64,000 bases of DNA. Source: Octopus bimaculoides. Lineage: Eukaryota. The stretch's first letter is position 1, and each line of letters begins with the position of its first letter. Location: the NCBI RefSeq assembly GCF_001194135.2, contig NC_068983.1, positions 103,356,836 through 103,420,835 on the forward strand, in the 5' to 3' direction. The notes below the pieces were generated by a model, which was given only the letters and a program-made list of their open reading frames with translations, was not told where the DNA came from and did no database searches. Shown here one piece after another: positions 1,339 to 62,871 of this stretch. The translations under genes were made by a program, and so were the position numbers.

Positions 1339-1680
1339 GGTAGGCGTGGCTGTGTAGTAAGAAACTTGCTTCCTAACCATATGGTTCTGGGTTTAGTCCC
1401 ACTGCGTGGCACCTTCGGCAAATTAACTTCTACTATAGCCTTGAGCCGACCAAAGCCTTGTGAGTGGATTTGGCAGACGGAAACTGAAAAAAGCCCGTCG
1501 TATATATATGTGTGTGTGTGTTTACATCCCCGTAACTTACCGGTTCGGTATAAAAAGACCGATAGAATAAGTACTTGGCTTACAGAGAATAAGTCTTGGA
1601 GGCGATTTCTTCCACTAAAACCTTTTAAAGTGGTGCCCCAGCATGGCAGCAGTCAAATAACTGAAACAAGTAAAAGAATA
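1339..1680 (+). mobile_element. tRNA-derived SINE family A
   Basis: TGGCTGTGTAGTAAG...GGTTTAGTCCC head, central (TA/TG)n, tail ...GGTGCCCCAGCATGGCAGCAGTC...GAAACAAGTAAAAG. Confidence 0.85.
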
Positions 1681-1701
1681 AAATATATACAGGTATATAT
1701 A

Positions 1702-2689
1702 CAGGGTGCATAAAGTATTTGAGGACATACCCTTTTTGGGTCATTGCTGCATTTTTTGCTAACTCTGTATAATCTTTGTTTCAGAAAATAATAATGGCAC
1801 ACCCTCAGCTTACTCAAGAAATGAAGAAGCATGCTATTATTGTGGTTATAAAAGCTGAGCATAGCGATTTAGAAATATTTTGATTTTTAAAAGTTACCAG
1901 ATCTTTCGTCTACAAAGTTTGTAAGAAACTATAGACTGAAGATGGAAACGTGTCACCAGTATCAAAGCATAAAAAGCATTCTAAACGCTCTGAAATCATC
2001 AGAACACCTGGATTTATCCAGCAAGTTCAACCGACCATTGATTACAGTCCCAGAAAGTCCATGAGGTAAATTGCAGAAGATCTCCATGTATCAGAAGGAA
2101 CAATCAGAAATGTTGTCCACAAAGACATCAGATAGAAGTCTTATTTGATGAGGAAAAGTCAATTTGTGAGAAAAAGTAAAAAAAAAAATCACTACATCAG
2201 ATCTAAAAGCCTCTTAAACAAACTGAAGACAGTGTTTACAATGGAAGGCCATATGAGTTTCAATAATAAGACTCTGCACTATCACATAGAGCTCTATGGC
2301 TGAAAATGTTCATGATCAGATAACCCCTAACGTTTGGCCTCCTAATTCCCCAGATCTCAATCCACTGGACTATTACATGTGGAGCGTTGTTGAGAGAGAG
2401 AGAGAGGTCAATGAACACGCCCATAACATCAAATATTCATTGAAAGCCACCATCGTCAGAGTAATGTCCAAAATGAACCAGGACCACTTGATTCAAGCAT
2501 GTAGATGAATTAGGTCTCATATAGAAGCAGTTGTTGAGCTGAAGGTGGCTTTATTGAATAATATTACAGAAAAGAAGGGTTATTTTTTATCCTCATATAG
2601 CATTTTTTGATAAATAAAGTTATTATCCGTTATTATATATGTTTTTTTTTATAAACATAAATCTGTCCTCAAATATCTTACGCACCCTA
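1702..2689 (+). mobile_element. Tc1/mariner element (maT/DD37D-like), internally deleted, transposase pseudogenised
   Basis: TIRs CAGGGTGCATAAAGTATTTGAGGA / TCCTCAAATATCTTACGCACCCT after TA. HTH-region remnants with stops, and WPPNSPDLNPLDYYMW in ORF 2296-2508. Confidence 0.85.
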
Positions 2690-2699
2690 GCGTTCGAGA

Positions 2700-3420
2700 C
2701 ATACACACTTCACGTCTGGCTGTACAGCCTTTTTGTTTGTTTATTTCACCGTTTCGTTTTCCTGTCTTGTTTTCCGTCCGCCACTACCCTCCACGAAAAT
2801 AATTTAATTTGTGTTCGTGGGAAGAACCATTTTAACGATGCGTACTGCCTTAATTCTTCGAAACGCCGGAGTTTTAATGGTGGCAGCTGATGGAGGGGAT
2901 GTTTCTATGTGGCCTGCTTGTTTGTTGCACCTTGTTTACCATTTTTGTCCTTGTTCTTTTGCCACGTCATGTACCCAGTTATGTATCTATATGTACATGT
3001 GGNNNNNNNNNNNNNNNNNNNNNNNNNNNNNNNNNNNNNNNNNNNNNNNNNNNNNNNNNNNNNNNNNNNNNNNNNNNNNNNNNNNNNNNNNNNNNNNNNN
3101 NNNNNNNNNNNNNNNNNNNNNNNNNNNNNNNNNNNNNNNNNNNNNNNNNNNNNNNNNNNNNNNNNNNNNNNNNNNNNNNNNNNNNNNNNNNNNNNNNNNN
3201 NNNNNNNNNNNNNNNNNNNNNNNNNNNNNNNNNNNNACAGGTATGTGCATACCGACATCCACCTGTATGTATAGGTGCATATCTGGGTACAGGACATTGC
3301 ACACAAACGTAGACGAGAACACACGAGCCACATAGAGAACATTCTACTTCTTCAGCTACCCACGTTTTAACACCGGCGTTTCGACACACACACAACATTT
3401 CACCACGACAAACAAAACGA
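2700..3420. repeat. Two diverged, oppositely oriented copies of an interspersed repeat (family P2, possibly Penelope-like ends) flanking a gap
   Basis: 2850-3002 (+) and 3237-3390 (-) share GAAACGCCGG..CAGCTGAnG..ATGTT.CTATGTGGC..GTACCCAG.TATG. Further copies at ~6440-6580 (-) and ~34005-34200 (+). Confidence 0.65.
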
Positions 3421-4655
3421 AAGTAAAGTATCAGGGATGAGAAATATATCAAGCGTATTGCGTTATCGGGGAGTCGTGTCATGACAAAGCATGCCAGCAG
3501 TCAAACGCGTCTGTTTGCAGTTAGAGAGAAACCAAACTGATAACTGAAAATTCATTTGGACAATCCACTACAAATCCGGTCTGTCATCTGCTACCAGCAA
3601 ACGAAGTAGAACGAACAGATAAATGAAAAGATAAATATCGGCGCCTTTTACGGGTTTGAGTCATAACACCAAACATAAGAAGGCTCAATTCAAATGATCT
3701 AAAATCAGAATATCGAAAAGCCGAAATTCCGAATACTCATGATACCAAGAAGAAAATATGAAAAAAACCCCCAGAAATTTGAAACAATGATTACGATTAT
3801 TATTTGTGAGTAAATATGCACGTTACATTTCGCTTGTCTTTGTTAAGCACCATAACATAATAAAATGTTATAATAGAATCTCTTTCGAAACCATAAATAA
3901 ATATAATTTGAGAGCGTTTTCCGTGTTCCTTCACCCTAAAATATTTCAAAATTCGATGTTCTGAGCATTCGATCTTTCAAGCGTTCGGTCTTCAGATTAC
4001 CACACACATGTATTTGTTTGGCTTAGGTCAGACCGAATTGAGTAAACTTAAAATCTAAGAAAGACAATCTAATCGTAGTTATCCCCATCTTATTTTTAGA
4101 TTTGGTATATCTCAGACTGTATTATCTAATGCCTTCTTTCTAAAACGATAGAATCTGATCTGAAGGATTTTGGTTGGCTATTTCGGTGTTCGTAGTTTTG
4201 GGTGATCGCATGGGTGCTAGTGGCAATAGTTTTAATGATAATGATGGTTGTAGTGTTTTTAACCATCCTAGAACCGTTACCAAAGTAGACGCAGACACAA
4301 CTTAGAAGCAATCCACCTATAGACAAGAAATACAAACAAGAAATAACTCAATTCCCTTGTGACTGATGTAAAAAGAACAAAAATACAACTGGATTCTGTG
4401 TTAGCTGTTTTCCCTTTAAAATGTATACACACCCTATTTCAAGTTACACCAGATATAGTCAGTCTCTCACTGCTATTCTCACTCTGACATTCCTCAAAGC
4501 TGCCAATGTTGCTTTCTCTTTCCTAAGCCTATTATATTAAGACACACATCACACACAAACATATACATATTTATACAAACATTTATATACATACACACAC
4601 ACACACACACACACAGACATATAGATATATAAATACACACACACACACACACACG

Positions 4656-15853: not shown

Positions 15854-15952
15854 CCAAAGTAAGTACATAAATGCAAAACAAGGTGGAAAAAATAGTACTC
15901 AAATACCAGAGGAAGAGTAATATGCTTTATTAAAAAGCAGCAAAAATATCAC

Positions 15953-15996
15953 AAAAACTGTTACTCAGAGTTTCAGGTTTCCGTTCGGACAGTTTT
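15953..15996 (-). ncRNA. Degenerate minimal type I hammerhead ribozyme (second, inverted copy)
   Basis: Minus strand reads AAAACTGT-C[3-nt deletion]CGA-ACG-GAAA-CCT-GAA-ACTC-T-GAGT-A-ACAGTTTT. Confidence 0.6.
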
Positions 15997-16205
15997 GTTT
16001 AGAATGGAACAAAAATAAGGTTATAAGCAAACATATATAATTAGTTTAATGGATACACACTTGAAAACAGTTTTGTTTCATTGGTCCTTTCATTGTAAAG
16101 ACCATTGGTTGAAAGGACCAATGAAACAAAACCATTTTCAAATGTGTATCCATTAAACTAATTGTATATGTTTGCCTATAACCTTATTTTTGTTCCATTC
16201 TAAAC

Positions 16206-16251
16206 AAAACTGTCTGACAAACAGGAACGTGAAACTCTGAGTAACAGTTTT
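16206..16251 (+). ncRNA. Degenerate minimal type I hammerhead ribozyme
   Basis: Stem I AAAACTGT/ACAGTTTT, core CTGACAA (consensus CUGANGA), stem II ACA-GGAA-CGT, GAA, stem III ACTC-T-GAGT, GUA cleavage triplet. Confidence 0.7.
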
Positions 16252-16773
16252 TGTGATATTTTCGCTGCTTTTTAATAAAGTATATGTATATATATATATA
16301 TATATATATANNNNNNNNNNNNNNNNNNNNNNNNNNNNNNNNNNNNNNNNNNNNNNNNNNNNNNNNNNNNNNNNNNNNNNNNNNNNNNNNNNNNNNNNNN
16401 NNNNNNNNNNNNNNNNNNNNNNNNNNNNNNNNNNNNNNNNNNNNNNNNNNNNNNNNNNNNNNNNNNNNNNNNNNNNNNNNNNNNNNNNNNNNNNNNNNNN
16501 NNNNNNNNNNNNNNNNNNNNNNNNNNNNNNNNNNNNNNNNNNNNNNNNNNNNNNNNNNNNNNNNNNNNNNNNNNNNNNNNNNNNNNNNNNNNNNNNNNNN
16601 NNNNNNNNNNNNNNNNNNNNNNNNNNNNNNNNNNNNNNNNNNNNNNNNNNNNNNNNNNNNNNNNNNNNNNNNNNNNNNNNNNNNNNNNNNNNNNNNNNNN
16701 NNNNNNNNNNNNNNNNNNNNNNNNNNNNNNNNNNNNNNNNNNNNNNNNNNNNNNNNNNNNNNNNNNNNNNNNN

Positions 16774-25340: not shown

Positions 25341-26482
25341 CATCATCATCATCATCATCGTTTAACGTCCGCTTTCCATGCTAGCATGGGTTGGACGACT
25401 TGACTGAGGACTGGTGAAACCGGATGGCAACACCAGGCTCCAATCTAAATTTGGCAGAGTTTCTACAGCTGGATGCCCTTCCTAACGCCAACCACTCAGA
25501 GAGTGTAGTAGGTGCTTTTACGTGTCACCTGCACGAAGGCCAGTCAGGCGATACTGGCAACAGCCACGCTCGAAATGGTGTCTTTTATGTGCCANNNNNN
25601 NNNNNNNNNNNNNNNNNNNNNNNNNNNNNNNNNNNNNNNNNNNNNNNNNNNNNNNNNNNNNNNNNNNNNNNNNNNNNNNNNNNNNNNNNNNNNNNNNNNN
25701 NNNNNNNNNNNNNNNNNNNNNNNNNNNNNNNNNNNNNNNNNNNNNNNNNNNNNNNNNNNNNNNNNNNNNNNNNNNNNNNNNNNNNNNNNNNNNNNNNNNN
25801 NNNNNNNNNNNNNNNNNNNNNNNNNNNNNNNNNNNNNNNNNNNNNNNNNNNNNNNNNNNNNNNNNNNNNNNNNNNNNNNNNNNNNNNNNNNNNNNNNNNN
25901 NNNNNNNNNNNNNNNNNNNNNNNNNNNNNNNNNNNNNNNNNNNNNNNNNNNNNNNNNNNNNNNNNNNNNNNNNNNNNNNNNNNNNNNNNNNNNNNNNNNN
26001 NNNNNNNNNNNNNNNNNNNNNNNNNNNNNNNNNNNNNNNNNNNNNNNNNNNNNNNNNNNNNNNNNNNNNNNNNNNNNNNNNNNNNNNNNNNNNNNNNNNN
26101 NNNNNNNNNNNNNNNNNNNNNNNNNNNNNNNNNNNNNNNNNNNNNNNNNNNNNNNNNNNNNNNNNNNNNNNNNNNNNNNNNNNNNNNNNNNNNNNNNNNN
26201 NNNNNNNNNNNNNNNNNGGCTGTTCGTACACATGCGTCATACAGTCTGCCTTTTACTCTGAGTGAGAGTCCCTTTGTCGCCAGCAGGGGTAAGAGCTCTC
26301 TAAACTTTGCCCAGGCTATTCTTATTCTAGCAGCTACACTTTCAGCGCAGAATAAGAATAGCCTGGGCAAAGTTTAGAGAGCTCTTACCCCTGCTGGCGA
26401 CAAAGGGACTCTCACTCAGAGTAAAAGGCAGACTGTATGACGCATGTGTACGAACAGCCATGCTACATGGCAGTGAAACATG
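25338..26482 (-). mobile_element. 5'-truncated RTE-clade LINE spanning a gap, with an inverted duplication at its 5' end
   Basis: RT C-terminal block AARIRIAWAKFRELLPLLATKGLSLRVKGRLYDACVRTA(MLHGSET), plus the RTE-type 3' tail ending in (GAT)n at 25338-25594. Confidence 0.9.
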
Positions 26483-34611: not shown

Positions 34612-34838
34612 CTCTTTTACTCTTTTACTTGTTTCAGTCATTTGACTGTGGCCATGCTGGAGCACCACCTTTAGTCGAGCAAATCGACCCCAGGACTTAT
34701 TCTTTGTAAGCCTTAGTACTTATTCTATCGGTCTCTTTTTGCCGAACTGCTAAGTTACGGGGACGTAAACACACGAGCATCTGTTGTCAAGCGATGATGG
34801 GGGGACAAACACAGACACACAAACATATACACACACAC

Positions 34839-34899
<61 letters not shown>

Positions 34900-35061
34900 C
34901 AAATATACGACGGGCTTCTTTCAGTTTCCGTCTACCAAATCCACTCACAAGGCTTTGGTCGGCCCGAGGCTATAGTAGAAGACACTTGCCCAAGGTGCCA
35001 CGCAGTGGGACTGAACCCGGAACCATGTGGTTGGTAAGCAAGCTACTTACCACACAGCCAC
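34612..35061 (-). mobile_element. SINE family A, full-length young copy
   Basis: CpG-rich intact head and tail (GTCGAGCAAATCGACCCCAGG...GGACTGAACCCGGAACCATGTGG). Confidence 0.9.
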
Positions 35062-36867
35062 TGGATATAAAAGTCAATGGGGATAAGTCAAATAATCATT
35101 ATGAAATATAAAAGTGAAAACTTTATTGTAAACTTTTACTTAGAAAAGAACAAACTTTCTGCAAGATTTTTTATGCCATAAGAAAAATTTATCATGAATT
35201 TAATACAGCCATTGCTGAATCTGACAAGATGATGCAAAAGTGCAAAGTCAATAAAAAGGGGACTACCACAGCTGCTCATATAGGATTAACAATACTGATA
35301 CTATTTGTCAAACTGATGTATTCCCACATAGCAAGTACTAAAACAGAACACAAACCCAATGCTCCAAATATCGAATTTGAGCCAGAATTTCAAGAAATGG
35401 ATGAATTAATTGCTATAAAAAAAATACACTAAATTGAGTTACATAAGTCTTATAAAGCTCAAAATTAGCATGGAATCAGCATATTTGGAATTTTGTTTAT
35501 TCCCTCCCTCTGTTTTAATGTATAGAGAGTGAGGTCCAATTTTTACCTAGCCGATATTCTTGTACATGTAAATTTCATTTTTCTTTGAAGAATATTGGCC
35601 AAATGTCATCAATAAAAATCATATTATGCAATGAGTATTACTTTGTAGACTATCAAAGTCCGATGTGATGTTTTTTTTTTCTCCCCCCAATTTTAAATAT
35701 AGTCAGATAAACTGTAGTAGTGTTTACATTTTCACAAGTAGTGCTGATTTGTTTTGGGGTCTTTTCTATCTCTCACTCCCACTAACGAGTTTGCTGCAAG
35801 TTACAGATGTTTTTAATGATAAAAACAAGAAATTAATTTTCACATTTTGTTTTTTTTGAGAAAGGTAGCAGGTGGTTGTGAGATGTGCAAGAAATGACAG
35901 CTAAATCTCCCCTAAATCACACATCTTTTCATTTGAAAATATTTTTTTTAATCCCCCACAAGTCTTCCATTGTTTTTAAAGGCTTAGTTAAAAAAAAAAG
36001 GCTAAAATCGGTCCAGAGGAGGGTGAAGGGGAAGGGGGGAATCATAAATTTTCAAAAGTTTTTTTTCATAAAAAGCTTCCCACCATCATTTTCAAAGTTG
36101 TGATGTAAAAAACAATTNNNNNNNNNNNNNNNNNNNNNNNNNNNNNNNNNNNNNNNNNNNNNNNNNNNNNNNNNNNNNNNNNNNNNNNNNNNNNNNNNNN
36201 NNNNATTAGAAAAATCCTCATCAAAATGGAGAAAATCCAACTTATGTGAGCATCCTGATCCAAAACTCTACCATTAATAGCCACTTTTAAAAGTCCATTA
36301 AAATTTTATTGAAATGGTGTCTTGTTCCAAAATCTCGTGATTTATTTAGTTCTGTACCTACTACAAATGTGCCCCTTCTGGCTTGAACTTTGAGATTTAA
36401 TAAGGTCTGAAAACCCTGTGAAATCAGCTGGTTGTTACATGCAAAAAAAATAGGTTTCACGTAAATATTTTTTAAAATTGCTGAAACAAAAATTTCGTTT
36501 TCAAGAACCAGCAACACAAAAAAAACAAACAAAAAAAACACAGGCAACTGCTATGGACACTATTAATTTGTGTATGATTATCACCTCAGTTTCAAAGATA
36601 TGACATCACAAATATGGTTAATTATTCACTTAGACTTAATTGGGCAAGATTTCAACCAATTTGCTGACCATTCCAATTGTCATATTTCCTAAAATATTCA
36701 TCCAAGTTTCACAAATGTTTCTTTGGATGCTCTCCAAGGAAAGGTAGAGTGGAAGTTAGATTTACATATTTTCAAAAATTCATAGTGATGCCTACTATAA
36801 AAGTTAGGAAACAATTTTGTTAAAGCAAGTCAAAGCACAATAATAAAAATATAAAAGCAGGACTCAC

Positions 36868-37892
36868 ATTTTTATAGCAGTATCCATTCTACCTAAATTT
36901 TCATCTGGATAAACTGTCAATTTACTTCCATCTGCATCTCCAATTCCAACATTATGTCCCTGTCTCGCCATCATGGAAGGTGATGACACCAACATTTTAT
37001 TTGATAACGCCACCTCTTCTGGTGACATACGCGAGTCTTTTGGATAGGAGAACAATTCATTGGAGATAGAATCCACTATGCCATTTTGATTCAGTACCTG
37101 ACTTTCTAAAGAGCGTGACAACATCTTATCATAGGCTCCAACAAAGGCATCTTTATATATTAAATTGTCATTCTGGTTTGACCCCTTTCCTGACAAATCT
37201 TGATATTCATATTTAATCATCTGAGGATCAATAAGGCTAGATGTGAGTGAATATTGCTTAGCATTCAGTAAAAGAGCTTTATTTGATTCTTCATCAAGGT
37301 CCATCATTTTCTGATTATGGTTATCTGATGGCAGAGAGTGTCTTCTGTCTACAAGCGTTTCATAATTAGGCCGGCTAGTCAATACTTGATGGCTGTCACT
37401 GTTAACTGAATGCACCTGATCGGAACCTGATTCATATGTAGCACGAACAGGACCTAGGTACTGGTGGTGTTGAGCATTATCAGTAAGAGAGTGGTGGCTA
37501 CGGTCCTGCACCCCATCATTGTAAGTAGAATGGTTATCTAACAACTGATGTCCAGAGGGTTGGTGATGAGTATCTGGTGTCATTGATCGATGATTCCGAT
37601 CTTGAAGGTTTCCATTAAAAGTGGGACGACTTTCCATAATGTGATGACCAATTAATGAAAGATGATTATCATGCACCCTCACAGTTCGACTACATTCTTG
37701 CAGCTCATAAGCAGGCCGGTTCATTGTGTAGATGTCATCTGTCATTGGGGGTATGGTGTTAGTATAAGCTAGATTCCCTTCACTAGTCACTACTTCACCA
37801 TTCTCTTCAAGAGCTTCATTTTTACTAGTGTTTGTCTTTGTTAAAGGCCCATCTAAGGCTAAAGTATGCCCTTTGCTGGAAGGCCTTTCCAT
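36868..37892 (-). CDS. First coding exon (342 codons) of an unidentified multi-exon gene; His/Ser/Asp/Asn-rich, probably disordered N-terminal region
   Basis: The longest gap-free ORF in the window, with no TE-like motifs. The ATG is in GGA-ATG-G context with in-frame stops upstream. A strong acceptor (tttctttttctcttttcag|) gives an exon start at 38024, so 132 nt is 5'UTR. A canonical donor AAAAT|GTGAGT follows 36868, so the ORF's TGA lies inside the donor and the protein continues (phase 2). It contains a psi-K-x-E SUMO-type motif (IKYE). No domain recognised. Confidence 0.8.
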
Positions 37893-45074: not shown

Positions 45075-46905
45075 TCATCATCATCATCGTTGTTTAACAT
45101 CTAGATTTCCATGCTTAAATGGGCCAGATGGAATATGTTGAGGCAGAGTCTCTCCAGCTGGATGTCCTCTCTGTCACCAGCCCTCATTGGTTTCTAAGCA
45201 CAATAATATCTCTCATGACCAGACATGGTCTCACAGAATATTGGAAACATTGGGTTGGCAAGAAAGTAATTTCAGTTTTTTAGTGTGAAATAAAAGTCAT
45301 TTTTTCACACAAAGAATGGACTTTAATCAATTATATATTTTCCATTTTGTTTGATGACCTTTTGCCATCTTTCTGGCAACTTCATGATTCCGCACTCATA
45401 GAACTTCTGATCCTTATCATAAAAAAACTGAAGCAAGTGCGACTGCAGGTCATCATCATTATTGAAAGTTTTACCATTCAAAGAATTTTGCAAACTTCAA
45501 AATAAATGGTAACCTGATGGTGCAAGGTCAGGGCTATATGGTGGATGTGACATCACTTTCCAAACATGCTCCAATAATTTTTCACGAGTTAGCAAAGACG
45601 TGTGTGGTCTAGTGTTGTCATGGTGGAACACCATTCCTTTACGATTTTTCAATTCTGGCTGTTTTTCGCTGATTGCTTCCTCCAGTTTCATTGGTTGTTT
45701 GTTCAGTGTCGATTTTAACATGGAGTGTAAAAACAAACATTTTCACTATATATTGCTTTTTTTATTTCCATAAAGGCAAGAAAGCTGCTGAGGCTCACAA
45801 AGAGATATGTGAAGTTTATGGTTCTGGAGATTTTTCATGCAATGATGACCAATGTTCTGGTCAACCTACTGAAGTTGATGATGACCAAATCAAAGCAATC
45901 CAAAATACACAACACCTTTATAATCCCATCAAATTGACAGCATGACCTTTTTTGGATGCAATTCAGCTTTCGATGTGGTTTGTGCTCGTTCATTACGCTT
46001 GGACTAAGATCGTTTTCAACTGATGCTTTTGTAGACAATCCACTTTCCATTACCAGTGATGATTCATTTTTAAAAAAAGGTAAATTTTATTGCGTTTGAG
46101 ATGTATATCGCAAATATTGATTCGTTGTGTTAAGTGAATCTCTTTCAATTTATGTGGAACCCAAATATCGAGCTTCTTAACAAGTACAAGACATTTTAAG
46201 CGATTTTCAATTGTTGTTTGTGACACATATAACCTATCTGTAATTTCACGCACAGTTATATGACTATCAGATTCAATCATGGCTTTGATTTGGTCATCAT
46301 CAACTTCAGTAAGTTGACCAGAACGTTGGTCATCATTGAGTGAAAAATTTCCAGAATGGAATTTCTTAAACCATTTCTGACATGTATGTTCTGTTAAGCA
46401 ATTAACACCATAAACTTCACATATCTCTTCCTGAGTCTCAGCAGCTTTCTTGCCTTTATGGAAATGAAACAGCAAATTATGGCGAAAATGTTTTGTTTTT
46501 ACACTCCATGTTAAAATTGACATTGAACTAACAACTGTAAACAAAATTATGCACAATTTGCTTCTAAAGTAAGCTAAAAGTAATGGCTATCAAATGTCAA
46601 AAGGAAAAAATCATAACATTGACAAAAGTCACTCAAAAAAATTATAATTTACGACAAACGAAATGAATTTCTTGCCAACCCAATATGACACTGCTTGTAT
46701 GACAGTGAAAAACTCATCAGCAACTACCACATGTTGTCAAAACATGTAGACACAAACACACACACACACACACAAACCAAATCCACTCACAAGGCTTTGG
46801 TTGGCCTGAGGCAATAGTAGAAGACACTTGCTCAATGTTTCATGCGGTGGGGCTGAACCTGAAATTATGTGGTTGGGAAGCAAACTATTAAACTATACAG
46901 CCATG
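45075..46905 (-). mobile_element. SINE family A' split by the mariner insertion (45075-45249 and 46686-46905)
   Basis: The two flanks join into a sequence collinear with the 51895 copy (AATATTGGAAA|TGAC..TGCTTGTATGACAGTGA). Confidence 0.75.
45250..46683 (-). mobile_element. Near full-length mariner element with pseudogenised transposase and an internal inverted duplication
   Basis: TIRs TTGGGTTGGCAAGAAA. ORF fragments 46556-46050 (HTH, WVPHKL) and 45736-45497 (HHDNTRPH, HPPYSPDLAPS, matching mariner motifs WVPHEL and YSPDLAP). Confidence 0.95.
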
Positions 46906-47279: not shown

Positions 47280-47638
47280 ATGTGGCTGTGTGGTAAGAAG
47301 TTTGCTTCCCAACCACATGGTTCCAGGTTCAGTTCCACTGTACGGCACCATGTGTCTTCTACTGTAGCCTTGGGCCAACCAAAACCTTGTTAGTGGATTT
47401 GGGAGATGGAAACTGAAAGAAGCCTATTGTATGTGTGTATTTGTCCCCCCACCATCATGCTTGACAACAGATGCTGGTGTGTTTATGTCCACATAACTTA
47501 GCAGTTTGGCAAGAGAGACTGACAGAATAACTACCAGGCTTTAAAAAAAAAAACAAGTACTTGGGTTGATTCATTCGACTAAAATTCCTCAAGGCGGTGC
47601 CCCAGTATGGCCGCAGTCTCATGACTGAAACAAGTAAA
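47280..47638 (+). mobile_element. SINE family A
   Basis: Full head and tail match. Confidence 0.85.
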
Positions 47639-47752
47639 ACATTCTTATGAACAGAATGTTTTGAAGAAGTTCAGAAGATTAACACTTTGTTCAAATTTCC
47701 ATAAGGTTAAGCAAGAGACAAAAGTTCAATTGTACGGGAAGGTAGTCTATGT

Positions 47753-49563: not shown

Positions 49564-49593
<30 letters not shown>

Positions 49594-49594
<1 letters not shown>

Positions 49595-50275
49595 CTCTTT
49601 TACTTGTTTCAGTCATTTGACTGTGGCCATGCTGGAGCACCGCCTTTAGTCGAGCAAATCGACCCCTGGACTTATTCTTTGTAAGCCTAGTACTTATTCT
49701 ATCGGTCTTTTTTTGCCNNNNNNNNNNNNNNNNNNNNNNNNNNNNNNNNNNNNNNNNNNNNNNNNNNNNNNNNNNNNNNNNNNNNNNNNNNNNNNNNNNN
49801 NNNNNNNNNNNNNNNNNNNNNNNNNNNNNNNNNNNNNNNNNNNNNNNNNNNATATATATATATATATACAATGCAACAACAAAAAATTCTACCATGATGC
49901 AGGTGTAGTTGTGTGGTAAAGATGCTTGATTTGCAACCATTTGGTTGCAGGCTCAGACCTACTGTGTGGCACCTTGGGCTAGTGTCTTCTACTATAGTCC
50001 CAGGCCTACCAATGCCTTGTGTGTGGATTTGGTAGACAGAAACTGGAAGAAGCCCATCATGTGTGTGTGTGTGAAGCTCTACTTGAGAACTGGTGTCGGT
50101 TTGTTTATGTCTGTGTAACTTAAGAGTTCAGCAAAAGAGATGAGAGAATAAGTACTAGTCTTAAAAAGGAAAAAAAAAAGAACATAGGTTCTGAGGTCAA
50201 TTTGTTCAAGTATATACTTGAAGTGTGGTGCCCCAGTATGGCCTCTGTATACTGAATGAGACAAGTAAAAGATAA
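49594..50275. mobile_element. Two SINE family A copies: minus-strand tail running into a gap (49594-49717) and a plus-strand copy (49900-50275)
   Basis: Matches to the family A tail and head respectively. Confidence 0.8.
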
Positions 50276-58310: not shown

Positions 58311-60391
58311 CAATGTCTCTTCTAATCAAAACTATAGGAGCAAAATCGAGATGAACTGAGTCCATGATTCAGCAACTGAAGTCTCAATGTTCAAGAGCAG
58401 GCCACTTAATAGTGAAACTAATAAAAAGAAGAAAAAAATCTCAAGTTTCATGCCTGATCCAACGATAACAGAATGGCAAATCCCTAATAGTGAAATGTTT
58501 TGTCTATTGTTGACTTCTAAAGTGAGTATAATCGCTATCTTCCTTTAATATCAGCTCCAGTCATTTCAAAGAACACCATTGTTTACAAATGTCTTGGAAA
58601 AGGCATGAATATCATTACATTTCTCATTCCCAAAAAATCTGAGCCTGAATCTTGTGCAAAAAAAAAAAAAATTACACATGCCATTTATACTCTCGAAAAC
58701 CATGAGACGGATGAGATCCCACTAGATTTTCCCTTTTTTTTTTTTTTTTTTNNNNNNNNNNNNNNNNNNNNNNNNNNNNNNNNNNNNNNNNNNNNNNNNN
58801 NNNNNNNNNNNNNNNNNNNNNNNNNNNNNNNNNNNNNNNNNNNNNNNNNNNNNNNNNNNNNNNNNNNNNNNNNNNNNNNNNNNNNNNNNNNNNNNNNNNN
58901 NNNNNNNNNNNNNNNNNNNNNNNNNNNNNNNNNNNNNNNNNNNNNNNNNNNNNNNNNNNNNNNNNNNNNNNNNNNNNNNNNNNNNNNNNNNNNNNNNNNN
59001 NNNNNNNNNNNNNNNNNNNNNNNNNNNNNNNNNNNNNNNNNNNNNNNNNNNNNNNNNNNNNNNNNNNNNNNNNNNNNNNNNNNNNNNNNNNNNNNNNNNN
59101 NNNNNNNNNNNNNNNNNNNNNNNNNNNNNNNNNNNNNNNNNNNNNNNNNNNNNNNNNNNNNNNNNNNNNNNNNNNNNNNNNNNNNNNNGGATCTGAAGTC
59201 ATCATCCCCTCCTCCTTTTACTTAAAAGGATTTCCTTTGCCAGTTGTTTTGTCTGAGATTTTTTTTATTGCAAAATCAATTCTAATGAACGGAGTGCACT
59301 GGCTCCAGATGAAAAAAAAAAAATAAATGTCTCAGTGACCTTGCTGGCTGCTGACAGTGTTGAACGGAACGAGGAGTAGAGAATCCCAGCTTAAAACATA
59401 GAGTTACCTCCCTTACTTCTCCGGTTCCAGACATTTGTTGTTTTGAAAATTATAGATTCAATAAACAATTTTTTTTATTAAAAGTAAGTTTGCTTTTACG
59501 CACGAGAGAAAAAAAGAAAATATTCTCAGAAAGCTAGAGCTTTATTTTTTAACATATCGTTAAACTTAATATATTACTATTTCAATACATGAGCAGTAAG
59601 AGTAGGAAGTATGATATTACAGTTTAAAACTGGCTGAAACGAATGTTCAGAGAGATTATTCACATTTATACTACTTTCTAATCGACATCTAGTAACTTAA
59701 TAGTTAAATTAATGGTCGTGAGTCAAAGAGGAAGCTTCTACGCTTGACCTGCTAAAAACAGTAACTGAATATTCCATTAGCTCTCATATTACTTACAATC
59801 TTTAAAAACAAAACCAAAAAAAAAACACCTTAAATAATGTAGACCTAGATATATTGTCTAACAAAAACTAGAATAAGTGAGGGTGGTCAATATTCGAAAC
59901 AATCTCGATCATATATCAGCCTTATCTGAGATCACCTGGGACTATGGATTAAACAATTACCATTTAGTCGATTGACGTATTTCGTATCACAGTGCTTTAC
60001 AGGAAGTTTAATTCTAGGATGCAAATCTACAACTTAGAAAATCCTCTGTGTGTGCGTGCGCGCGCTGAAATGCGTGTGTCACATCCTATAGTGCACTCAC
60101 AGTAAATGGGACAANNNNNNNNNNNNNNNNNNGGGGGGGGGTGTAAGAGACGAATTCCTAGTTGTGACGTGGCATTAAAATTTATTAACTGGTAATTTAC
60201 TATTTTAAGTAAGTTCAAGTGACAGAAAGGATATACCATATGACATATATAAATAGCGGATATTTCGTTTCCATCTCGTTCTATTCCGTTTTCCAATCGT
60301 TTTGGAACTCAATTGTAATCACCACTCCTCGCTGTAATGTCATTATTTACTCTTTTTTTCCCCCCTGGTGCATCTAAACCTTTAGTTTTTA

Positions 60392-60628
60392 GGTACTACT
60401 AAAGCAGCGCGGACCCGAACGCGCAGTCGCGCGTCCACGCTAGCTAGTCGTGAGTGGTCGATCCTAACCCTAACCCTAACCCTAAACACGTATTCATTTG
60501 CACACGCGGGTTAGGGATAGGGTTAGGGTTAGGGTTAGGGACAGGGTTAGGGTTAAGATCGACCACTCAAGACTAGCTAGCGCGGACGCGCGACTGCGCG
60601 TTCGGGTCCGCGCTGCTTTAGTAGTACC
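60392..60628. mobile_element. Non-autonomous foldback DNA transposon (Mutator/MULE-like by 9-bp TSD) with internal telomeric-repeat arrays
   Basis: TIRs of ~82 bp starting GGTACTACTAAAGCAGCGCGG, 3 mismatches. Perfect 9-bp direct repeat TAGTTTTTA at 60383-60391 and 60629-60637. (CCCTAA)n in the left arm, (TTAGGG)n-like array in the right arm. Confidence 0.85.
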
Positions 60629-61083
60629 TAGTTTTTATTTTGCTTCTTTATTGTTTATTTAATTATTCTCTACCTTCGTTTAAAGCAAAAATTTTCGGAA
60701 TCTAATAGTTATGTCCCTTTGCAATCTGAGCTTAAATCCCACGGGAGTCGAGTTTTGCCTTTCCCTCTTTCTGGTGAGGAGAAAACAAGTACTGACCACA
60801 AGTAGCAGATTAAATAGGCGACTGAGATTCCTTTTGGAAAATTACTGGACTTGTATGTTTGAAACGATTAATTTTAATGTTAGTTATACACACACACATA
60901 ACTGAGCTTTATTTATAAACATGGGATCTTTATGATTTGACGGGCAACATTTTTTTATGTAGTGTTTTTGGTACCGAAACACTTTCAAACTTCGAATACT
61001 TGTATATTAAATTTAAACACAACCTACAAACACTCCACAACTGCTGCCACAATAACTAATGCAGCTTCAATTGAATCCCAAGA

Positions 61084-61153
61084 CTACTTGGCCAAATATG
61101 TGAATAGAAAGCGCGCGCGCATTAGCTCTGTGTTCACATATTTGGCCAAGTAG
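61084..61153. repeat. 70-bp hairpin with a perfect 21-bp inverted repeat
   Basis: CTACTTGGCCAAATATGTGAA (61084-61104) and its exact reverse complement (61133-61153), with (GC)5 in the loop. Confidence 0.85.
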
Positions 61154-62871
61154 CCGGTGTCAGTTGCTTTACTGATGTAAGTAACACTTCGTAAATCAAA
61201 GAGAACGAGGATAACTACAGACAACTTTCGAAACTTCCAGCTACTATACCCAAATGATTATATATTCATATATATATACTAGTAATAATTTATGCAGTTT
61301 GTTTTATAAATGCTAAAGTCAATCTGGGAAAGCTAAGGTTTTCAGAAAAACATATCAACCAATGAACACGAACATTGCAAATATAATCTATCAGTGGAAC
61401 AGTAAAAATATTCAATAATTTCCTCAAGTTGAAAATGTGATACTGCTTTGGTTATTTCTACAATCCAATGATGAGGCTTTGTATCTTCCTTAGAAACATG
61501 TCCCTTCCTTACAAAGAGATTTCAAACAATCAGAACAGAAGAATACACACACATATATACGTATATACATACAAAGCAAGCAAGCAAACAAAATCTGTTT
61601 CAGCAATTGGACTGTGGCTCTATACTTGATCACTGTGTTTTGGTTATAAATGATTATATCAAATCAAACCTAAAACTTGTAGACTGGTATATTATGCTAT
61701 TTTACTGATATATTATACTATTTTACTGGATTTAGGCCAGGTTAACCTTAAATACACACACACTCACACAGATACATACATACACACATGTATACACACA
61801 CACACACATATATATATTTGACCTTGCCTAATGGATTCATATGAACTCGTGTTACTACATACACATAAGACATTAGGTTTTGTTATGTAATGAACGTGGT
61901 TGCAGTATTAGCGATGGTTCACTCAAAACAGCTGTCAAGAGACTATTACATAACTTTTTTTCATTTAATCTGTAATTATTTTTTACTCTGTATTTTGAAT
62001 TCCGTGTAAATATACTCATTCAGCTCACTTGTGTTTATCTGTCTTTCTACATATACACACACACAGTGGGGTGTCATATTAGCTACTGTTTTATTTAAAT
62101 TATGCTACTTACATTATTTTACCTTCCATGTCTGGTATATGATACACAATTAAAAAACATAAATTAAGAAACATCAAGACAGGAAATTTTCCAAACATTA
62201 AGAAATTTTCAATTTTTTTTTCCTCCTACATTCATTCATTCTCACAGTATATTACATGCATTCTCTCTATCTCCCACACACACACACATAATCATGGCAC
62301 ATACATACATACATACACATACACATACATACATCATGTACACACAAACACATTATCATGTACATACAGAAAAAAAAAATACCACCATTATGTTTTGTCT
62401 TTTTGTACCATGCCTGGCTACAGTTGGCACCACCCAAAAGTATAGGGTAGTTCTGTTCTGAATATATAAAGTGTATAAGATTCTCTTTGTTACAACATGT
62501 ATAATTGGAGCAGAAGCGTTTTCTTTTTTGCATTTTTTAATTCGTATTTTACGTATCATTTTTGTTTTCTTCAATGATTTTATTTACTTTTTTTATTTTG
62601 GTTGGTTGGTTGGTTGGTACATTTATTTTATTTAAGCATTTTTTTTTCATTTGCAAATCTATGTTTCATTCTATTCAATACCAACATTTTGTGTGCGTGT
62701 GTGTATGTGGGGTGGTGGTGAGCACACATAATTTTGTTGAAATGGTATTTGATACAGAATAGATTTTTTTGTATAAAATATGATACAAAAAACCTGAACA
62801 CATATTTGAAGAAAATACGTGTGTGTGTAATATGTGTTAATGTGTATATTCATATATGCTTATATATTATA

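What the first reader, a model, noticed from the sequence alone, without database searches (positions are those of the whole stretch)
60383..60637. Young Mutator-like foldback element with inward-facing telomeric arrays in a CpG-rich promoter-like region
Seen: a 237-bp element with ~82-bp TIRs (3 mismatches, CpGs intact) and a perfect 9-bp TSD TAGTTTTTA. The left arm ends in CCTAA(CCCTAA)3. The right arm starts with eight GGG tracts (GGG TTAGGG ATAGGG TTAGGG TTAGGG TTAGGG ACAGGG TTAGGG). A ~23-bp spacer contains ATTTGCAC, one base from the octamer ATTTGCAT. Established: a 9-bp TSD with long TIRs starting in G fits the Mutator superfamily, which favours promoter/open chromatin. TTAGGG is the common metazoan telomere repeat and four or more tracts can form G-quadruplexes. 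Inference: a mobile cassette that delivers a cruciform, G4/i-motif and telomere-protein binding sites to promoters, or seeds telomere healing at its own excision breaks. The head-to-head CCCTAA/TTAGGG order is the reverse of a telomere-fusion scar.
Basis: partly seen in the sequence, partly recalled or inferred. Interest (0 to 1): 0.8.

Follow-up and report, generated by a model that had tools for sequence, protein, structure and literature searches.

The report
Small foldback transposon with telomere repeats
A 237-bp non-coding cut-and-paste transposon copy, probably in an octopus genome, has long inverted ends whose inner parts are telomere-type repeats; the structure is real and unusual, but its superfamily, copy number and any function are untested.

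Summary
A 237-bp element (60392-60628) is flanked by a perfect 9-bp direct repeat, TAGTTTTTA. Its 94-nt inverted arms have 5 mismatches. Each arm is 72 nt of unique CpG-rich sequence followed by telomere-type hexamers: 4 C-strand units on the left and 8 G-tracts on the right, around a 22-nt centre.

It is best read as a non-autonomous foldback-type DNA transposon (MITE) inserted with a 9-bp target duplication. The hexamers occupy the place where animal Mutator-like elements carry subterminal tandem repeats.

"Mutator" is not established. Merlin elements (5'-GG termini, 8-9 bp duplications) fit equally, and no transposase partner or second copy could be found with the collections available.

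The flanks are not CpG-depleted, unlike most of the window. They are only 33-37% G+C and nothing shows a promoter. Telomere healing at excision breaks is illogical, because the arrays leave with the element. G4, cruciform and protein-binding roles remain inference.

New here: the same architecture, with long inverted arms around a CCCTAA-centre-TTAGGG core, recurs in unrelated low-GC eukaryotic metagenome contigs. One of these has an 11-bp duplication and a second copy at another locus. Verdict: new variant of a known kind, moderate interest.

The parts
60383..60391 (.). Left copy of the 9-bp target-site duplication TAGTTTTTA
   Evidence: family D8, 100% identical. The base before it differs from the base before the right copy (T vs C), so the repeat is exactly 9 bp.
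60392..60628 (.). The whole 237-bp foldback element. It is non-coding; the longest internal ORFs are 40 aa and are translations of the telomere repeats.
60392..60463 (+). Left terminal inverted repeat, unique part (72 nt, starts 5'-GGTACTAC, 11 CpG)
   Evidence: It is 97.2% identical to the reverse complement of 60557-60628.
60406..60441 (.). Nested imperfect palindrome inside the left arm: AGCGCGGACCCG, then 12 nt, then CGCGTCCACGCT. A candidate protein-binding site (inference).
   Evidence: D3 and I15 show the mirror copy at 60579-60614; read.
60463..60485 (+). C-strand telomere-type array CCTAA(CCCTAA)3, forming the inner part of the left arm
   Evidence: (D4, I3-I7).
60486..60507 (.). Asymmetric 22-nt centre ACACGTATTCATTTGCACACGC. 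It contains ATTTGCAC at 60496-60503.
   Evidence: There is no other copy in the window. It shares the 8-mer ACACGTAT with the centre of the metagenome family L028/L029/L082/L118.
60508..60555 (+). G-strand telomere-type array with eight G3 tracts and the variants ATAGGG and ACAGGG. It holds two non-overlapping canonical G4 motifs.
   Evidence: (D1).
60557..60628 (-). Right terminal inverted repeat, unique part (72 nt, 11 CpG)
60629..60637 (.). Right copy of the 9-bp target-site duplication TAGTTTTTA
   Evidence: D8.
59300..61300 (.). CpG-non-depleted, AT-rich patch in which the element sits. This is context, not part of the element.
   Evidence: CpG observed/expected 0.82-0.96 with the element removed, against a window median of 0.28..

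Best explanation
The feature is one inserted copy of a short, non-autonomous, foldback-type cut-and-paste DNA transposon (a MITE).

Shown: a transposase that makes 9-bp staggered cuts integrated it at TAGTTTTTA, which was duplicated.

Inferred: the transposase was supplied in trans by an autonomous relative that has not been seen. The superfamily is Mutator-like (my estimate about 0.55) or Merlin (about 0.3).

Each end is a long terminal inverted repeat with two parts. The outer part is 72 nt of unique CpG-rich sequence containing its own 12+12-nt palindrome. The inner part is an array of telomere-type hexamers. That inner position is where animal Mutator-like foldback elements carry subterminal tandem repeats whose copy number varies between copies. 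The two arms nearly meet, so the whole element is a hairpin-former.

Inferred: the near-palindromic form arose either by internal deletion of a longer element with such ends, or by fold-back copying of one end.

The TTAGGG arrays match the presumed host telomere repeat. Their role, if any, is in the element's own biology, for example as repeated binding sites for the transposase or for a host telomere-repeat-binding protein, rather than a demonstrated host function. G4 potential, cruciform potential and the location in an unmethylated-looking patch are properties of the sequence, not shown activities.
For: Integration by transposition. There is a perfect 9-bp direct repeat directly abutting 94-nt inverted arms. 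The probability of a chance 9/9 match is about 1e-5. The termini are unique in the window.

Foreign origin. The element has 57% G+C and CpG observed/expected 1.31, inside flanks of 33% G+C.

Non-autonomous. It is 237 bp with no ORF beyond 40 aa of repeat translation.

Fit to the known kind. MULEs have 8-11 bp duplications and long inverted repeats (PMC6446971). All 14 Aedes MULE families have 8-9 bp duplications. Twelve of them have inverted repeats over 100 bp, and ten of those contain subterminal tandem repeats. Muta1 is called a type-2 Foldback element, and its non-autonomous derivatives vary in repeat number (PMC5225508). Merlin has 5'-GG termini and 8-9 bp duplications (PMC8101967). Mutator, Merlin and MITE families are annotated in Octopus vulgaris (PMC13282606).

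Array length is asymmetric, 4 units against 8 with variant units. This is what slippage-prone subterminal repeats would give.

Recurrence of the architecture in mobile DNA elsewhere. L095 has about 130-nt arms around CCCTAA/TTAGGG arrays, starts GGCAGGGG, and is flanked by an 11-bp direct repeat GCTTCCTTATG. L065 is a second copy, about 93% identical, at a different locus of the same metagenome. L079 has arms over 500 nt with 17-nt subrepeats and the same core. L048 has arms of at least 100 nt. L028/L029/L082/L118 have the same kind of core in the subterminal-repeat region of a contig that encodes a 1420-aa ORF with Transposase_21 and DUF4218 matches.

Host telomere. TTAGGG is the only experimentally determined cephalopod telomere motif (PMC13218726). 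The window's abundant SINE matches, from my memory, the common octopod SINE.

Not an artefact. The arms are imperfect and the arrays unequal, unlike the perfect palindrome that abuts an N gap at 26218-26459.
Against: Only one copy is available. No second copy, no autonomous partner and no empty site were found. None of the searchable collections holds the host genome, so this absence says little either way.

The superfamily is undetermined.

Known subterminal repeats in MULEs are 9-15 bp family-specific motifs, not the host telomere hexamer. Why telomere repeats are used is unexplained.

The metagenome analogues were selected by a pattern that fixed the orientation and a short centre. Most of the 120 or more hits are a different phenomenon. 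Only one analogue has a clear target duplication.

Host identity rests on my memory of a SINE. The mariner protein search did not settle it.
Confidence: 0.72

Rival explanations
1. The element is a Merlin-superfamily MITE, mobilised by an IS1595-like DDE transposase, rather than a Mutator-like element.
For: Merlin elements have inverted repeats of 24-462 bp with a conserved terminal 5'-GG and 8- or 9-bp duplications (PMC8101967). This element starts 5'-GGTACT, has 72-94-nt inverted repeats and a 9-bp duplication. Merlin families are annotated in Octopus vulgaris.
Against: Merlin is rarer than Mutator in the octopus annotation: 2 recently active families against 21. Foldback organisation with subterminal tandem repeats is documented for animal MULEs, and I have no source showing it for Merlin. 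The one analogue with a clear duplication, L095, has 11 bp, which is outside the Merlin range, but it is an unrelated family.
Confidence: 0.3
2. The palindrome was made by fold-back copying of a single transposon end that lay next to a one-directional telomere-like array. A 3' end folded back, or a template switch occurred at a structure-prone array. This created two perfect ends that a transposase could then move. On this view the arrays sit at the centre because that is where the turn-around happened, not because they are needed.
For: The inverted symmetry covers everything except a 22-nt centre. The same 'arrays at the centre of a palindrome' arrangement is seen with unrelated arm sequences and in at least two transposon contexts: an 11-bp duplication in L095, and a Transposase_21/DUF4218 ORF next to L082. 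This suggests a DNA-level process rather than one transposase's binding preference. The G-rich array is the only G4-forming sequence in the window.
Against: There is no direct evidence. The right array's variant units (ATAGGG, ACAGGG) are not mirrored on the left, so later slippage must be added. The metagenome pattern required arrays close to a centre, so the recurrence is partly a selection effect. This reading is compatible with the best explanation rather than exclusive of it.
Confidence: 0.3
3. One reading: a mobile cassette selected, or exapted, because it delivers G-quadruplex/i-motif DNA, a cruciform and telomere-protein binding sites to promoters, or because it seeds new telomeres at its excision breaks.
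For: Eight G3 tracts with 3-nt loops give two canonical G4 motifs. There are perfect TTAGGG repeats. The hairpin is very stable. The insertion lies in one of only two CpG-non-depleted patches of the window. MULEs tend to insert near genes (PMC6446971).
Against: No promoter, exon or transcript evidence was found. There is a single copy and no conservation data. Only one strand of one arm has four or more G tracts. A centre of 22-49 nt disfavours cruciform extrusion (established DNA biophysics, from my knowledge). The telomere-seeding idea fails on geometry, because the arrays are excised with the element and the donor ends keep only TAGTTTTTA. The CCCTAA-to-TTAGGG order is also the reverse of what telomerase would add to the two ends of an in-situ break.
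Confidence: 0.08
4. It is a Tc1/mariner-type (Stowaway-like) MITE with a TA duplication, and the 9-bp repeat is a coincidence of the target.
For: The inverted repeat can be extended by TA on each side (I1 spans 60390-60630). Tc1/mariner is the commonest DNA-transposon group in the octopus annotation, and mariner remnants lie in the window.
Against: This reading requires the target to have been a pre-existing tandem TAGTTTT-TAGTTTT-TA. The chance of such a 7-bp match is about 1e-4 with local composition (per-base match 0.277).
Confidence: 0.03
5. It is an assembly artefact (a chimeric fold-back read), or a relic of telomere fusion or telomerase healing, and not a transposon.
For: The window is a gapped draft with 15 N runs, one of them 260 bp upstream. 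A perfect palindrome abuts another gap at 26218-26459.
Against: The arms are imperfect and the arrays unequal. A precise 9-bp duplication flanks the structure. Fusion or healing would give the order TTAGGG then CCCTAA and no unique inverted arms.
Confidence: 0.03

Closest known systems
Animal Mutator-like foldback elements, e.g. Aedes aegypti Muta1 and its non-autonomous derivatives (PMC5225508)
   Same: 8-9 bp target duplications. Long terminal inverted repeats built from a terminal motif plus tandem subterminal repeats. Short non-coding derivatives that keep little more than the ends, with variable repeat number. Foldback character.
   Different: Muta1-type subterminal repeats are 9-15 bp family-specific units, not the host telomere hexamer. 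The octopus-like element has no known transposase partner. Its terminal sequences are unrelated.
Merlin superfamily (IS1595-related) elements and their MITEs (PMC8101967)
   Same: Terminal 5'-GG, inverted repeats within the 24-462 bp range, 8-9 bp duplication.
   Different: I could not find any report of telomere-type or other hexamer arrays forming the inner inverted repeat. The transposase was not found here.
Drosophila Foldback (FB) elements (from my knowledge: 9-bp duplications, long inverted ends made of tandem subrepeats, Mutator-related transposase)
   Same: Long inverted ends that consist largely of short tandem repeats and nearly meet; 9-bp duplication.
   Different: FB subrepeats are 10-31 bp and unrelated to telomere repeats. 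FB arms are hundreds to thousands of bp. This comparison is not tested here.
Telomere-bearing elements of ciliates (Oxytricha TBE1-3; PMC3731211), and Tetrahymena Tel-1 (from my knowledge)
   Same: DNA transposons whose inverted ends include the host's telomere repeat, with the C-rich strand 5' on the left and the G-rich strand 3' on the right.
   Different: In TBEs the telomere repeats are the outermost 17 bp of the element. The elements are Tc1/mariner-type with a 3-bp ANT duplication and encode their own transposase. Here the arrays are the innermost part of the arms, behind 72 nt of unique terminus, with a 9-bp duplication.
Interstitial telomeric sequences: fusion-type (head-to-head) and short arrays inserted at double-strand-break repair (PMC6410037, PMC7215372, PMC8537989)
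   Same: Short TTAGGG arrays far from a chromosome end. [quoted passage not shown]
   Different: Fusion scars read TTAGGG then CCCTAA, the opposite order. Repair-inserted arrays are one-directional and lack inverted arms and a target duplication.

Membership tests
Mutator superfamily (MULE), non-autonomous member | Target-site duplication of 8-11 bp, typically 9 | tested here: met
   Perfect 9-bp TAGTTTTTA on both sides. Criterion from PMC6446971.
Mutator superfamily (MULE), non-autonomous member | Long terminal inverted repeats (tens to hundreds of bp), often with subterminal tandem repeats | tested here: met
   94-nt arms, made of 72 nt unique sequence plus hexamer arrays. This feature is shared with other superfamilies, so it does not discriminate.
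Mutator superfamily (MULE), non-autonomous member | An autonomous relative with the same termini encoding a MURA-type DDE transposase | not testable with these tools
   No transposase of this kind among the window ORFs scanned. The host genome is not searchable. Peptide and DNA searches with the terminus found nothing.
Merlin superfamily, non-autonomous member | 8- or 9-bp duplication and inverted repeats of 24-462 bp that begin 5'-GG | tested here: met
   9-bp duplication; the terminus is GGTACTAC.... Criterion from PMC8101967.
Merlin superfamily, non-autonomous member | An autonomous relative encoding a DDE_Tnp_IS1595 transposase | not testable with these tools
   Same limits as for Mutator.
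MITE / foldback element (structural class) | Short, non-coding, with terminal inverted repeats and a target duplication | tested here: met
   237 bp. The longest ORFs are 40 aa of repeat translation. Inverted repeats and duplication as above.
MITE / foldback element (structural class) | Multiple dispersed copies, each with its own duplication | not testable with these tools
   One copy in 64 kb. None in the metagenome, viral or prokaryotic collections, which do not contain the host.
Tc1/mariner-type MITE | TA target duplication | tested here: inconclusive
   TA flanks both ends, but only as part of the 9-bp repeat. This reading needs a pre-existing 7-bp tandem in the target, with probability about 1e-4.
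Ciliate-type telomere-bearing element | Telomere repeats form the extreme termini; 3-bp ANT duplication | tested here: not met
   The arrays begin 72 nt inside each end, and the duplication is 9 bp. Criterion from PMC3731211.
Fusion-type interstitial telomeric sequence | Head-to-head order (TTAGGG)n then (CCCTAA)n | tested here: not met
   The order here is (CCCTAA)n then (TTAGGG)n.
Break-repair (telomerase-inserted) short interstitial telomeric sequence | A single one-directional array with no inverted arms | tested here: not met
   There are two oppositely oriented arrays inside 72-nt unique inverted arms. No Rfam telomerase-RNA match in or next to the element.

The most novel reading that the evidence does not exclude
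Foldback DNA transposons whose inverted arms end, at the palindrome centre, in host telomere repeats in the order CCCTAA-centre-TTAGGG may form a recurrent, cross-phylum class. The candidates seen here are the cephalopod-like window, two families in coral metagenomes, a soil contig, and a protist-like element with a CACTA-type ORF. Such a class could arise because telomere-repeat arrays provoke fold-back copying of transposon ends. Alternatively, these elements may use telomere-repeat-binding proteins to pair or protect their ends. Either way they would be a sequence-level source of dispersed interstitial telomeric repeats.
Probability: 0.2. Interest if true: 0.7.

Novelty: new variant of a known kind. 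Interest (0 to 1): 0.4.

Why it matters
Interstitial telomeric repeats are usually explained by chromosome fusion or by telomerase acting at breaks. Transposition by mobile elements is listed in reviews only as a possibility (PMC6410037). This locus is a clean, base-resolved case in which a transposon with a target-site duplication has carried about 70 bp of telomere repeat, including the only G4-forming sequence in 64 kb, into an unmethylated-looking patch.

If the family has many copies, it would scatter G4-prone sites that telomere proteins could bind through the genome. It would also confound telomere-motif-based scaffolding and fusion inference in cephalopod assemblies.

The unrelated metagenomic elements with the same core suggest a general route by which telomere repeats and transposon ends become associated. 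That route can be tested directly once a host genome is searched.

Tried and rejected
1. Searches for other copies all found nothing. None of these collections can be expected to hold the host genome, so the absence is uninformative.

2. Host identification did not succeed. The 342-aa ORF at 36864-37892 has no homologue. The mariner HTH ORF hits many insects at 60-75% identity and Octopus sinensis at 59%, which is not decisive. SINE fragments were not found in the paper library. The octopod assignment therefore rests on my memory of the SINE.

3. Literature searches for transposons with internal inverted telomere arrays (and the sequence search) found no description. The supplement of the Octopus vulgaris repeat paper held no sequences.

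4. I considered that the centre motif ACACGTAT, shared with L028/L029/L082/L118, marks a conserved module. I rejected it as unproven. A chance 8-mer match between a 22-nt and a 10-nt spacer is about 1e-3 per comparison. L065 and L095, two copies of one family, differ at their centres.

5. I considered that telomerase built the arrays at an in-situ break or at a palindrome-centre break. I rejected this because both give the opposite order, TTAGGG then CCCTAA.

6. I thought the GC-rich marine hits might be the known Pelagomonas introners. The Pelagomonas genome paper confirms TTAGGG telomeres and about 210-bp introner elements, but it says nothing about telomere-repeat introns. That identification is unverified.

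7. Rfam at a permissive threshold gives only generic hairpin and miRNA-like matches far below the gathering scores, and no telomerase RNA.

8. The single hit in a 'Gammaproteobacteria MAG' (L121) is a degenerate telomere-like satellite and is irrelevant.
Full report
**What is there**

A 9-bp direct repeat, TAGTTTTTA, lies at 60383-60391 and 60629-60637. Between the two copies is a 237-bp element (60392-60628).

The element's two arms are inverted repeats of 94 nt with 5 mismatches. Each arm has an outer, unique, CpG-rich part of 72 nt: 60392-60463 on the left and 60557-60628 on the right. These parts have 2 mismatches between them and 11 CpG each.

Each arm also has an inner part made of telomere-type hexamers. 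On the left this is CCTAA(CCCTAA)3 at 60463-60485. On the right it is eight G3 tracts at 60508-60555, including the variants ATAGGG and ACAGGG.

The asymmetric centre is 22 nt (60486-60507) and contains ATTTGCAC. Inside each unique arm there is a further 12+12-nt imperfect palindrome, AGCGCGGAC(C/G)CG...CGCGTCC(A/G)CGCT (D3 and I15).

**Is it more than chance?**

Yes. With local base composition, a 9/9 match of the flanks has a probability of about 1e-5. The terminal 30-mer occurs only at the two ends, with none expected by chance. The single strand folds as DNA at -122.5 kcal/mol, against -38.7 +/- 3.3 for shuffles, z = -25.

The TTAGGG arrays are the only ones in the window. They hold the only two canonical G4 motifs in 64 kb, both on the top strand of the right arm.

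The element is compositionally foreign. It has 57% G+C and CpG observed/expected 1.31, inside flanks of 33% G+C.

**Context**

The window is a gapped draft of an AT-rich animal genome. It has 34% G+C, 15 N runs, overall CpG observed/expected 0.36, and hundreds of microsatellites. Rfam and tRNA scans find nothing.

A SINE-like repeat gives about 18 further partial matches in the window. From memory, it matches the common octopod SINE. I could not verify this with the tools. TTAGGG is the only experimentally determined cephalopod telomere motif (PMC13218726). If the host is an octopod, the arrays therefore match the host telomere repeat.

With the element removed, 1-kb windows across about 59.3-61.3 kb have CpG observed/expected 0.82-0.96, against a window median of 0.28. 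The only similar patch is at 2.5-4 kb. The insertion therefore lies in a patch that has escaped CpG depletion. That patch is only 33-37% G+C, and I found no exon, domain or RNA nearby. 'Promoter-like' remains a guess.

The flanks are unique within the window, so the element is not visibly nested in another repeat.

**What it is**

A precise target duplication flanking long inverted ends on a short non-coding sequence is the signature of a non-autonomous cut-and-paste transposon. The longest ORFs are 40-aa translations of the repeats.

The only other way to place the boundaries is a TA duplication with the arms extended by TA. That needs the target to have been a pre-existing TAGTTTT-TAGTTTT-TA tandem, with a probability of about 1e-4. 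I set it aside.

A 9-bp duplication narrows the superfamily to Mutator or Merlin. Mutator has 8-11 bp duplications and long inverted repeats (PMC6446971). Merlin has 8-9 bp duplications and inverted repeats of 24-462 bp with a conserved terminal 5'-GG (PMC8101967).

The closest documented anatomy is that of mosquito MULEs. All 14 Aedes families have 8-9 bp duplications, and 12 have inverted repeats over 100 bp. Ten of those 12 contain short subterminal tandem repeats. Muta1 is classed as a type-2 Foldback element, and its several hundred non-autonomous derivatives keep mainly the ends, with variable numbers of the subterminal repeat (PMC5225508).

The present element has the same plan, with the host telomere hexamer in the place of the subterminal repeat. 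Mutator, Merlin and MITE families are all annotated in Octopus vulgaris (PMC13282606). Without the transposase I put Mutator-like at about 0.55 and Merlin at about 0.3.

**Age**

The duplication is perfect and the unique arms are 97% identical. Both differences fall on CpG sites, one lost in each arm. That fits a fairly recent insertion, or an unmethylated location, or both. The two arms of a palindrome can also homogenise each other, so I would not convert this into a date.

**Relatives elsewhere**

The family itself could not be found anywhere I could search. None of those collections contains the host genome.

I also searched for the bare architecture, (CCCTAA)3-N10-40-(TTAGGG)3.

Most of these are a different thing. 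They are GC-rich marine contigs in which the 'centre' is a 30-40-nt coding-like piece lying between palindromic (TTAGGG)n(CCCTAA)n blocks that begin GT and end AG.

A minority of low-GC contigs have the same plan as the window element:
- L095 has arms of about 130 nt starting GGCAGGGG, a central CCCTAA/TTAGGG core, and an 11-bp direct repeat GCTTCCTTATG directly outside the arms.
- L065 is a second copy, about 93% identical, with a different right flank and different array lengths, from the same coral-associated metagenome.
- L079 has arms over 500 nt that carry 17-nt subrepeats around the same core.
- L048 has arms of at least 100 nt.
- L028, L029, L082 and L118, from four assemblies, have a 19-nt arm plus arrays. 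This sits among palindromic subterminal repeats of a contig that encodes a 1420-aa ORF with Transposase_21 and DUF4218 matches, both below Pfam's cut-offs.

Inverted arms around a CCCTAA-centre-TTAGGG core therefore recur in unrelated mobile-looking DNA. There are caveats. The pattern fixed the orientation and the short centre. Only L095 shows a clear duplication. The source organisms are unknown.

**How it most likely works**

- **Shown:** integration with a 9-bp staggered cut; long inverted ends; hexamer arrays forming the inner ends; strong hairpin and G4 potential.
- **Inferred:** mobilisation in trans by a Mutator-like or Merlin transposase that recognises the 72-nt terminus, in which the nested CpG-rich palindrome is a candidate binding site. 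The hexamer arrays would behave as subterminal repeats, with slippage explaining 4 units against 8.
- **Open:** why the telomere repeat is used. The arrays could be repeated binding sites for the transposase. They could recruit a host telomere-repeat-binding protein to pair or protect the ends. Or they could simply be where a fold-back copying event turned round when a one-ended fragment next to a telomere-like array was palindromised.

The recurrence of the core in contexts with different duplication lengths and a different transposase type leans slightly towards a DNA-level process. The selection effect of my search prevents a firm conclusion.

**What does not hold**

Telomerase cannot have built the arrays at a break in place, whether in the chromosome or at the palindrome centre. 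Both cases give TTAGGG then CCCTAA, the opposite of what is seen.

The order observed is what a free linear fragment capped at both ends would show. It is also the order at the ends of ciliate telomere-bearing elements (PMC3731211). There, however, the repeats are the outermost 17 bp, the duplication is 3 bp and the elements are Tc1/mariner-type, so this element is not a member of that group.

'Seeding telomere healing at its own excision breaks' fails on geometry, because the arrays leave with the element.

The octamer-like motif is expected by chance at about 0.03 per spacer and was chosen after the fact.

An assembly artefact is unlikely, because the arms are imperfect, the arrays are unequal and the duplication is precise. 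This contrasts with the perfect palindrome that abuts a gap at 26218-26459.

**Novelty and verdict**

A foldback MITE with subterminal repeats is a known kind. I did not find described, in five literature searches and several papers, the use of the host telomere hexamer as that repeat, lying inward behind a unique terminus. Curated repeat libraries could not be consulted.

Reviews mention transposon-borne telomere repeats only as a possible origin of interstitial telomeric sequences.

I rate this a new variant of a known kind with interest 0.4. The structure is real and unusual. It rests on one copy, with an undetermined superfamily, an unverified host and no functional evidence.

The most novel reading still open is a cross-phylum class of telomere-cored foldback transposons. 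I give it a probability of about 0.2. It can be tested directly by searching the host and other eukaryotic genomes.

Noticed in passing
window 61084-61153: A 70-nt hairpin about 450 bp downstream of the element, with 29-nt arms (90% complementary) and a CpG-rich 12-nt loop. The RNA fold is -41 to -43 kcal/mol, z -7 to -8, on either strand. Only weak miRNA-precursor-like Rfam matches were found, far below gathering scores. No flanking duplication is visible. It could be a small palindromic repeat or a hairpin RNA gene.
   Followed up: partly
window 15920-16285: Another foldback, MITE-like palindrome of about 366 bp with arms of about 173 nt and a 17-nt centre. The ends are ATATGCTTTATTAAAAAGC.../...GCTTTTTAATAAAGTATAT. 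It has no telomere repeats and no clear target duplication. Foldback elements seem common in this genome.
   Followed up: partly
window 26218-26459: A perfect 111-nt inverted repeat with a 20-nt centre that starts exactly at the end of a 623-N gap. It lies inside an ORF resembling the C-terminal part of a LINE reverse transcriptase. It looks like an assembly artefact or a very recent inverted duplication.
   Followed up: no
window 1340-1700 and about 18 further partial matches (e.g. 34615-35061, 47282-47639, 49571-50073): An abundant tRNA-like SINE with an internal (TG/TA)n stretch. From memory it matches the common octopod SINE. This is my only basis for calling the host an octopus.
   Followed up: partly
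window 45673-45945 (+) and 46050-46556 (-): Two mariner remnants with the Mos1 HTH_48 domain. The closest database proteins are insect SETMAR-like/mariner sequences at up to 75% identity, and Octopus sinensis at 59%.
   Followed up: partly
window 36864-37892 (-): A 342-aa open reading frame, the longest clean one in the window. It has no Pfam domain and no homologue among 5.8 billion proteins. It is either a lineage-specific exon or a chance ORF.
   Followed up: partly
window 2500-4000: The only other CpG-non-depleted patch in the window (observed/expected up to 1.27). It is interrupted by an N gap.
   Followed up: no
Metagenome loci such as L007 1-283, L109 257-634, L018 745-1201 and L039 17-421 (marine, 59-70% G+C): Coding-like GC-rich sequence is repeatedly interrupted by palindromic (TTAGGG)n(CCCTAA)n blocks that begin GT and end AG, leaving 30-40-nt pieces between them. 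They look like telomere-repeat introner-type insertions in an abundant marine protist. The Pelagomonas genome paper does not mention them.
   Followed up: partly
L082 8381-8476 (also L028 202-297, L029, L118): A telomere-cored hairpin with centre CCCATACGTG, sharing ACACGTAT with the window element's centre. It sits among 19-nt palindromic subterminal repeats (ATGTTACATGATGTAACAT) of an AT-rich contig. That contig encodes a 1420-aa ORF with weak Transposase_21 and DUF4218 matches and Dictyostelium-like low-complexity runs.
   Followed up: partly
L121 1000-2700 (contig of a 'Gammaproteobacteria MAG'): Kilobases of degenerate CCCTAA-like satellite with internal inversions. This is almost certainly eukaryotic contamination of the bin.
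   Followed up: no
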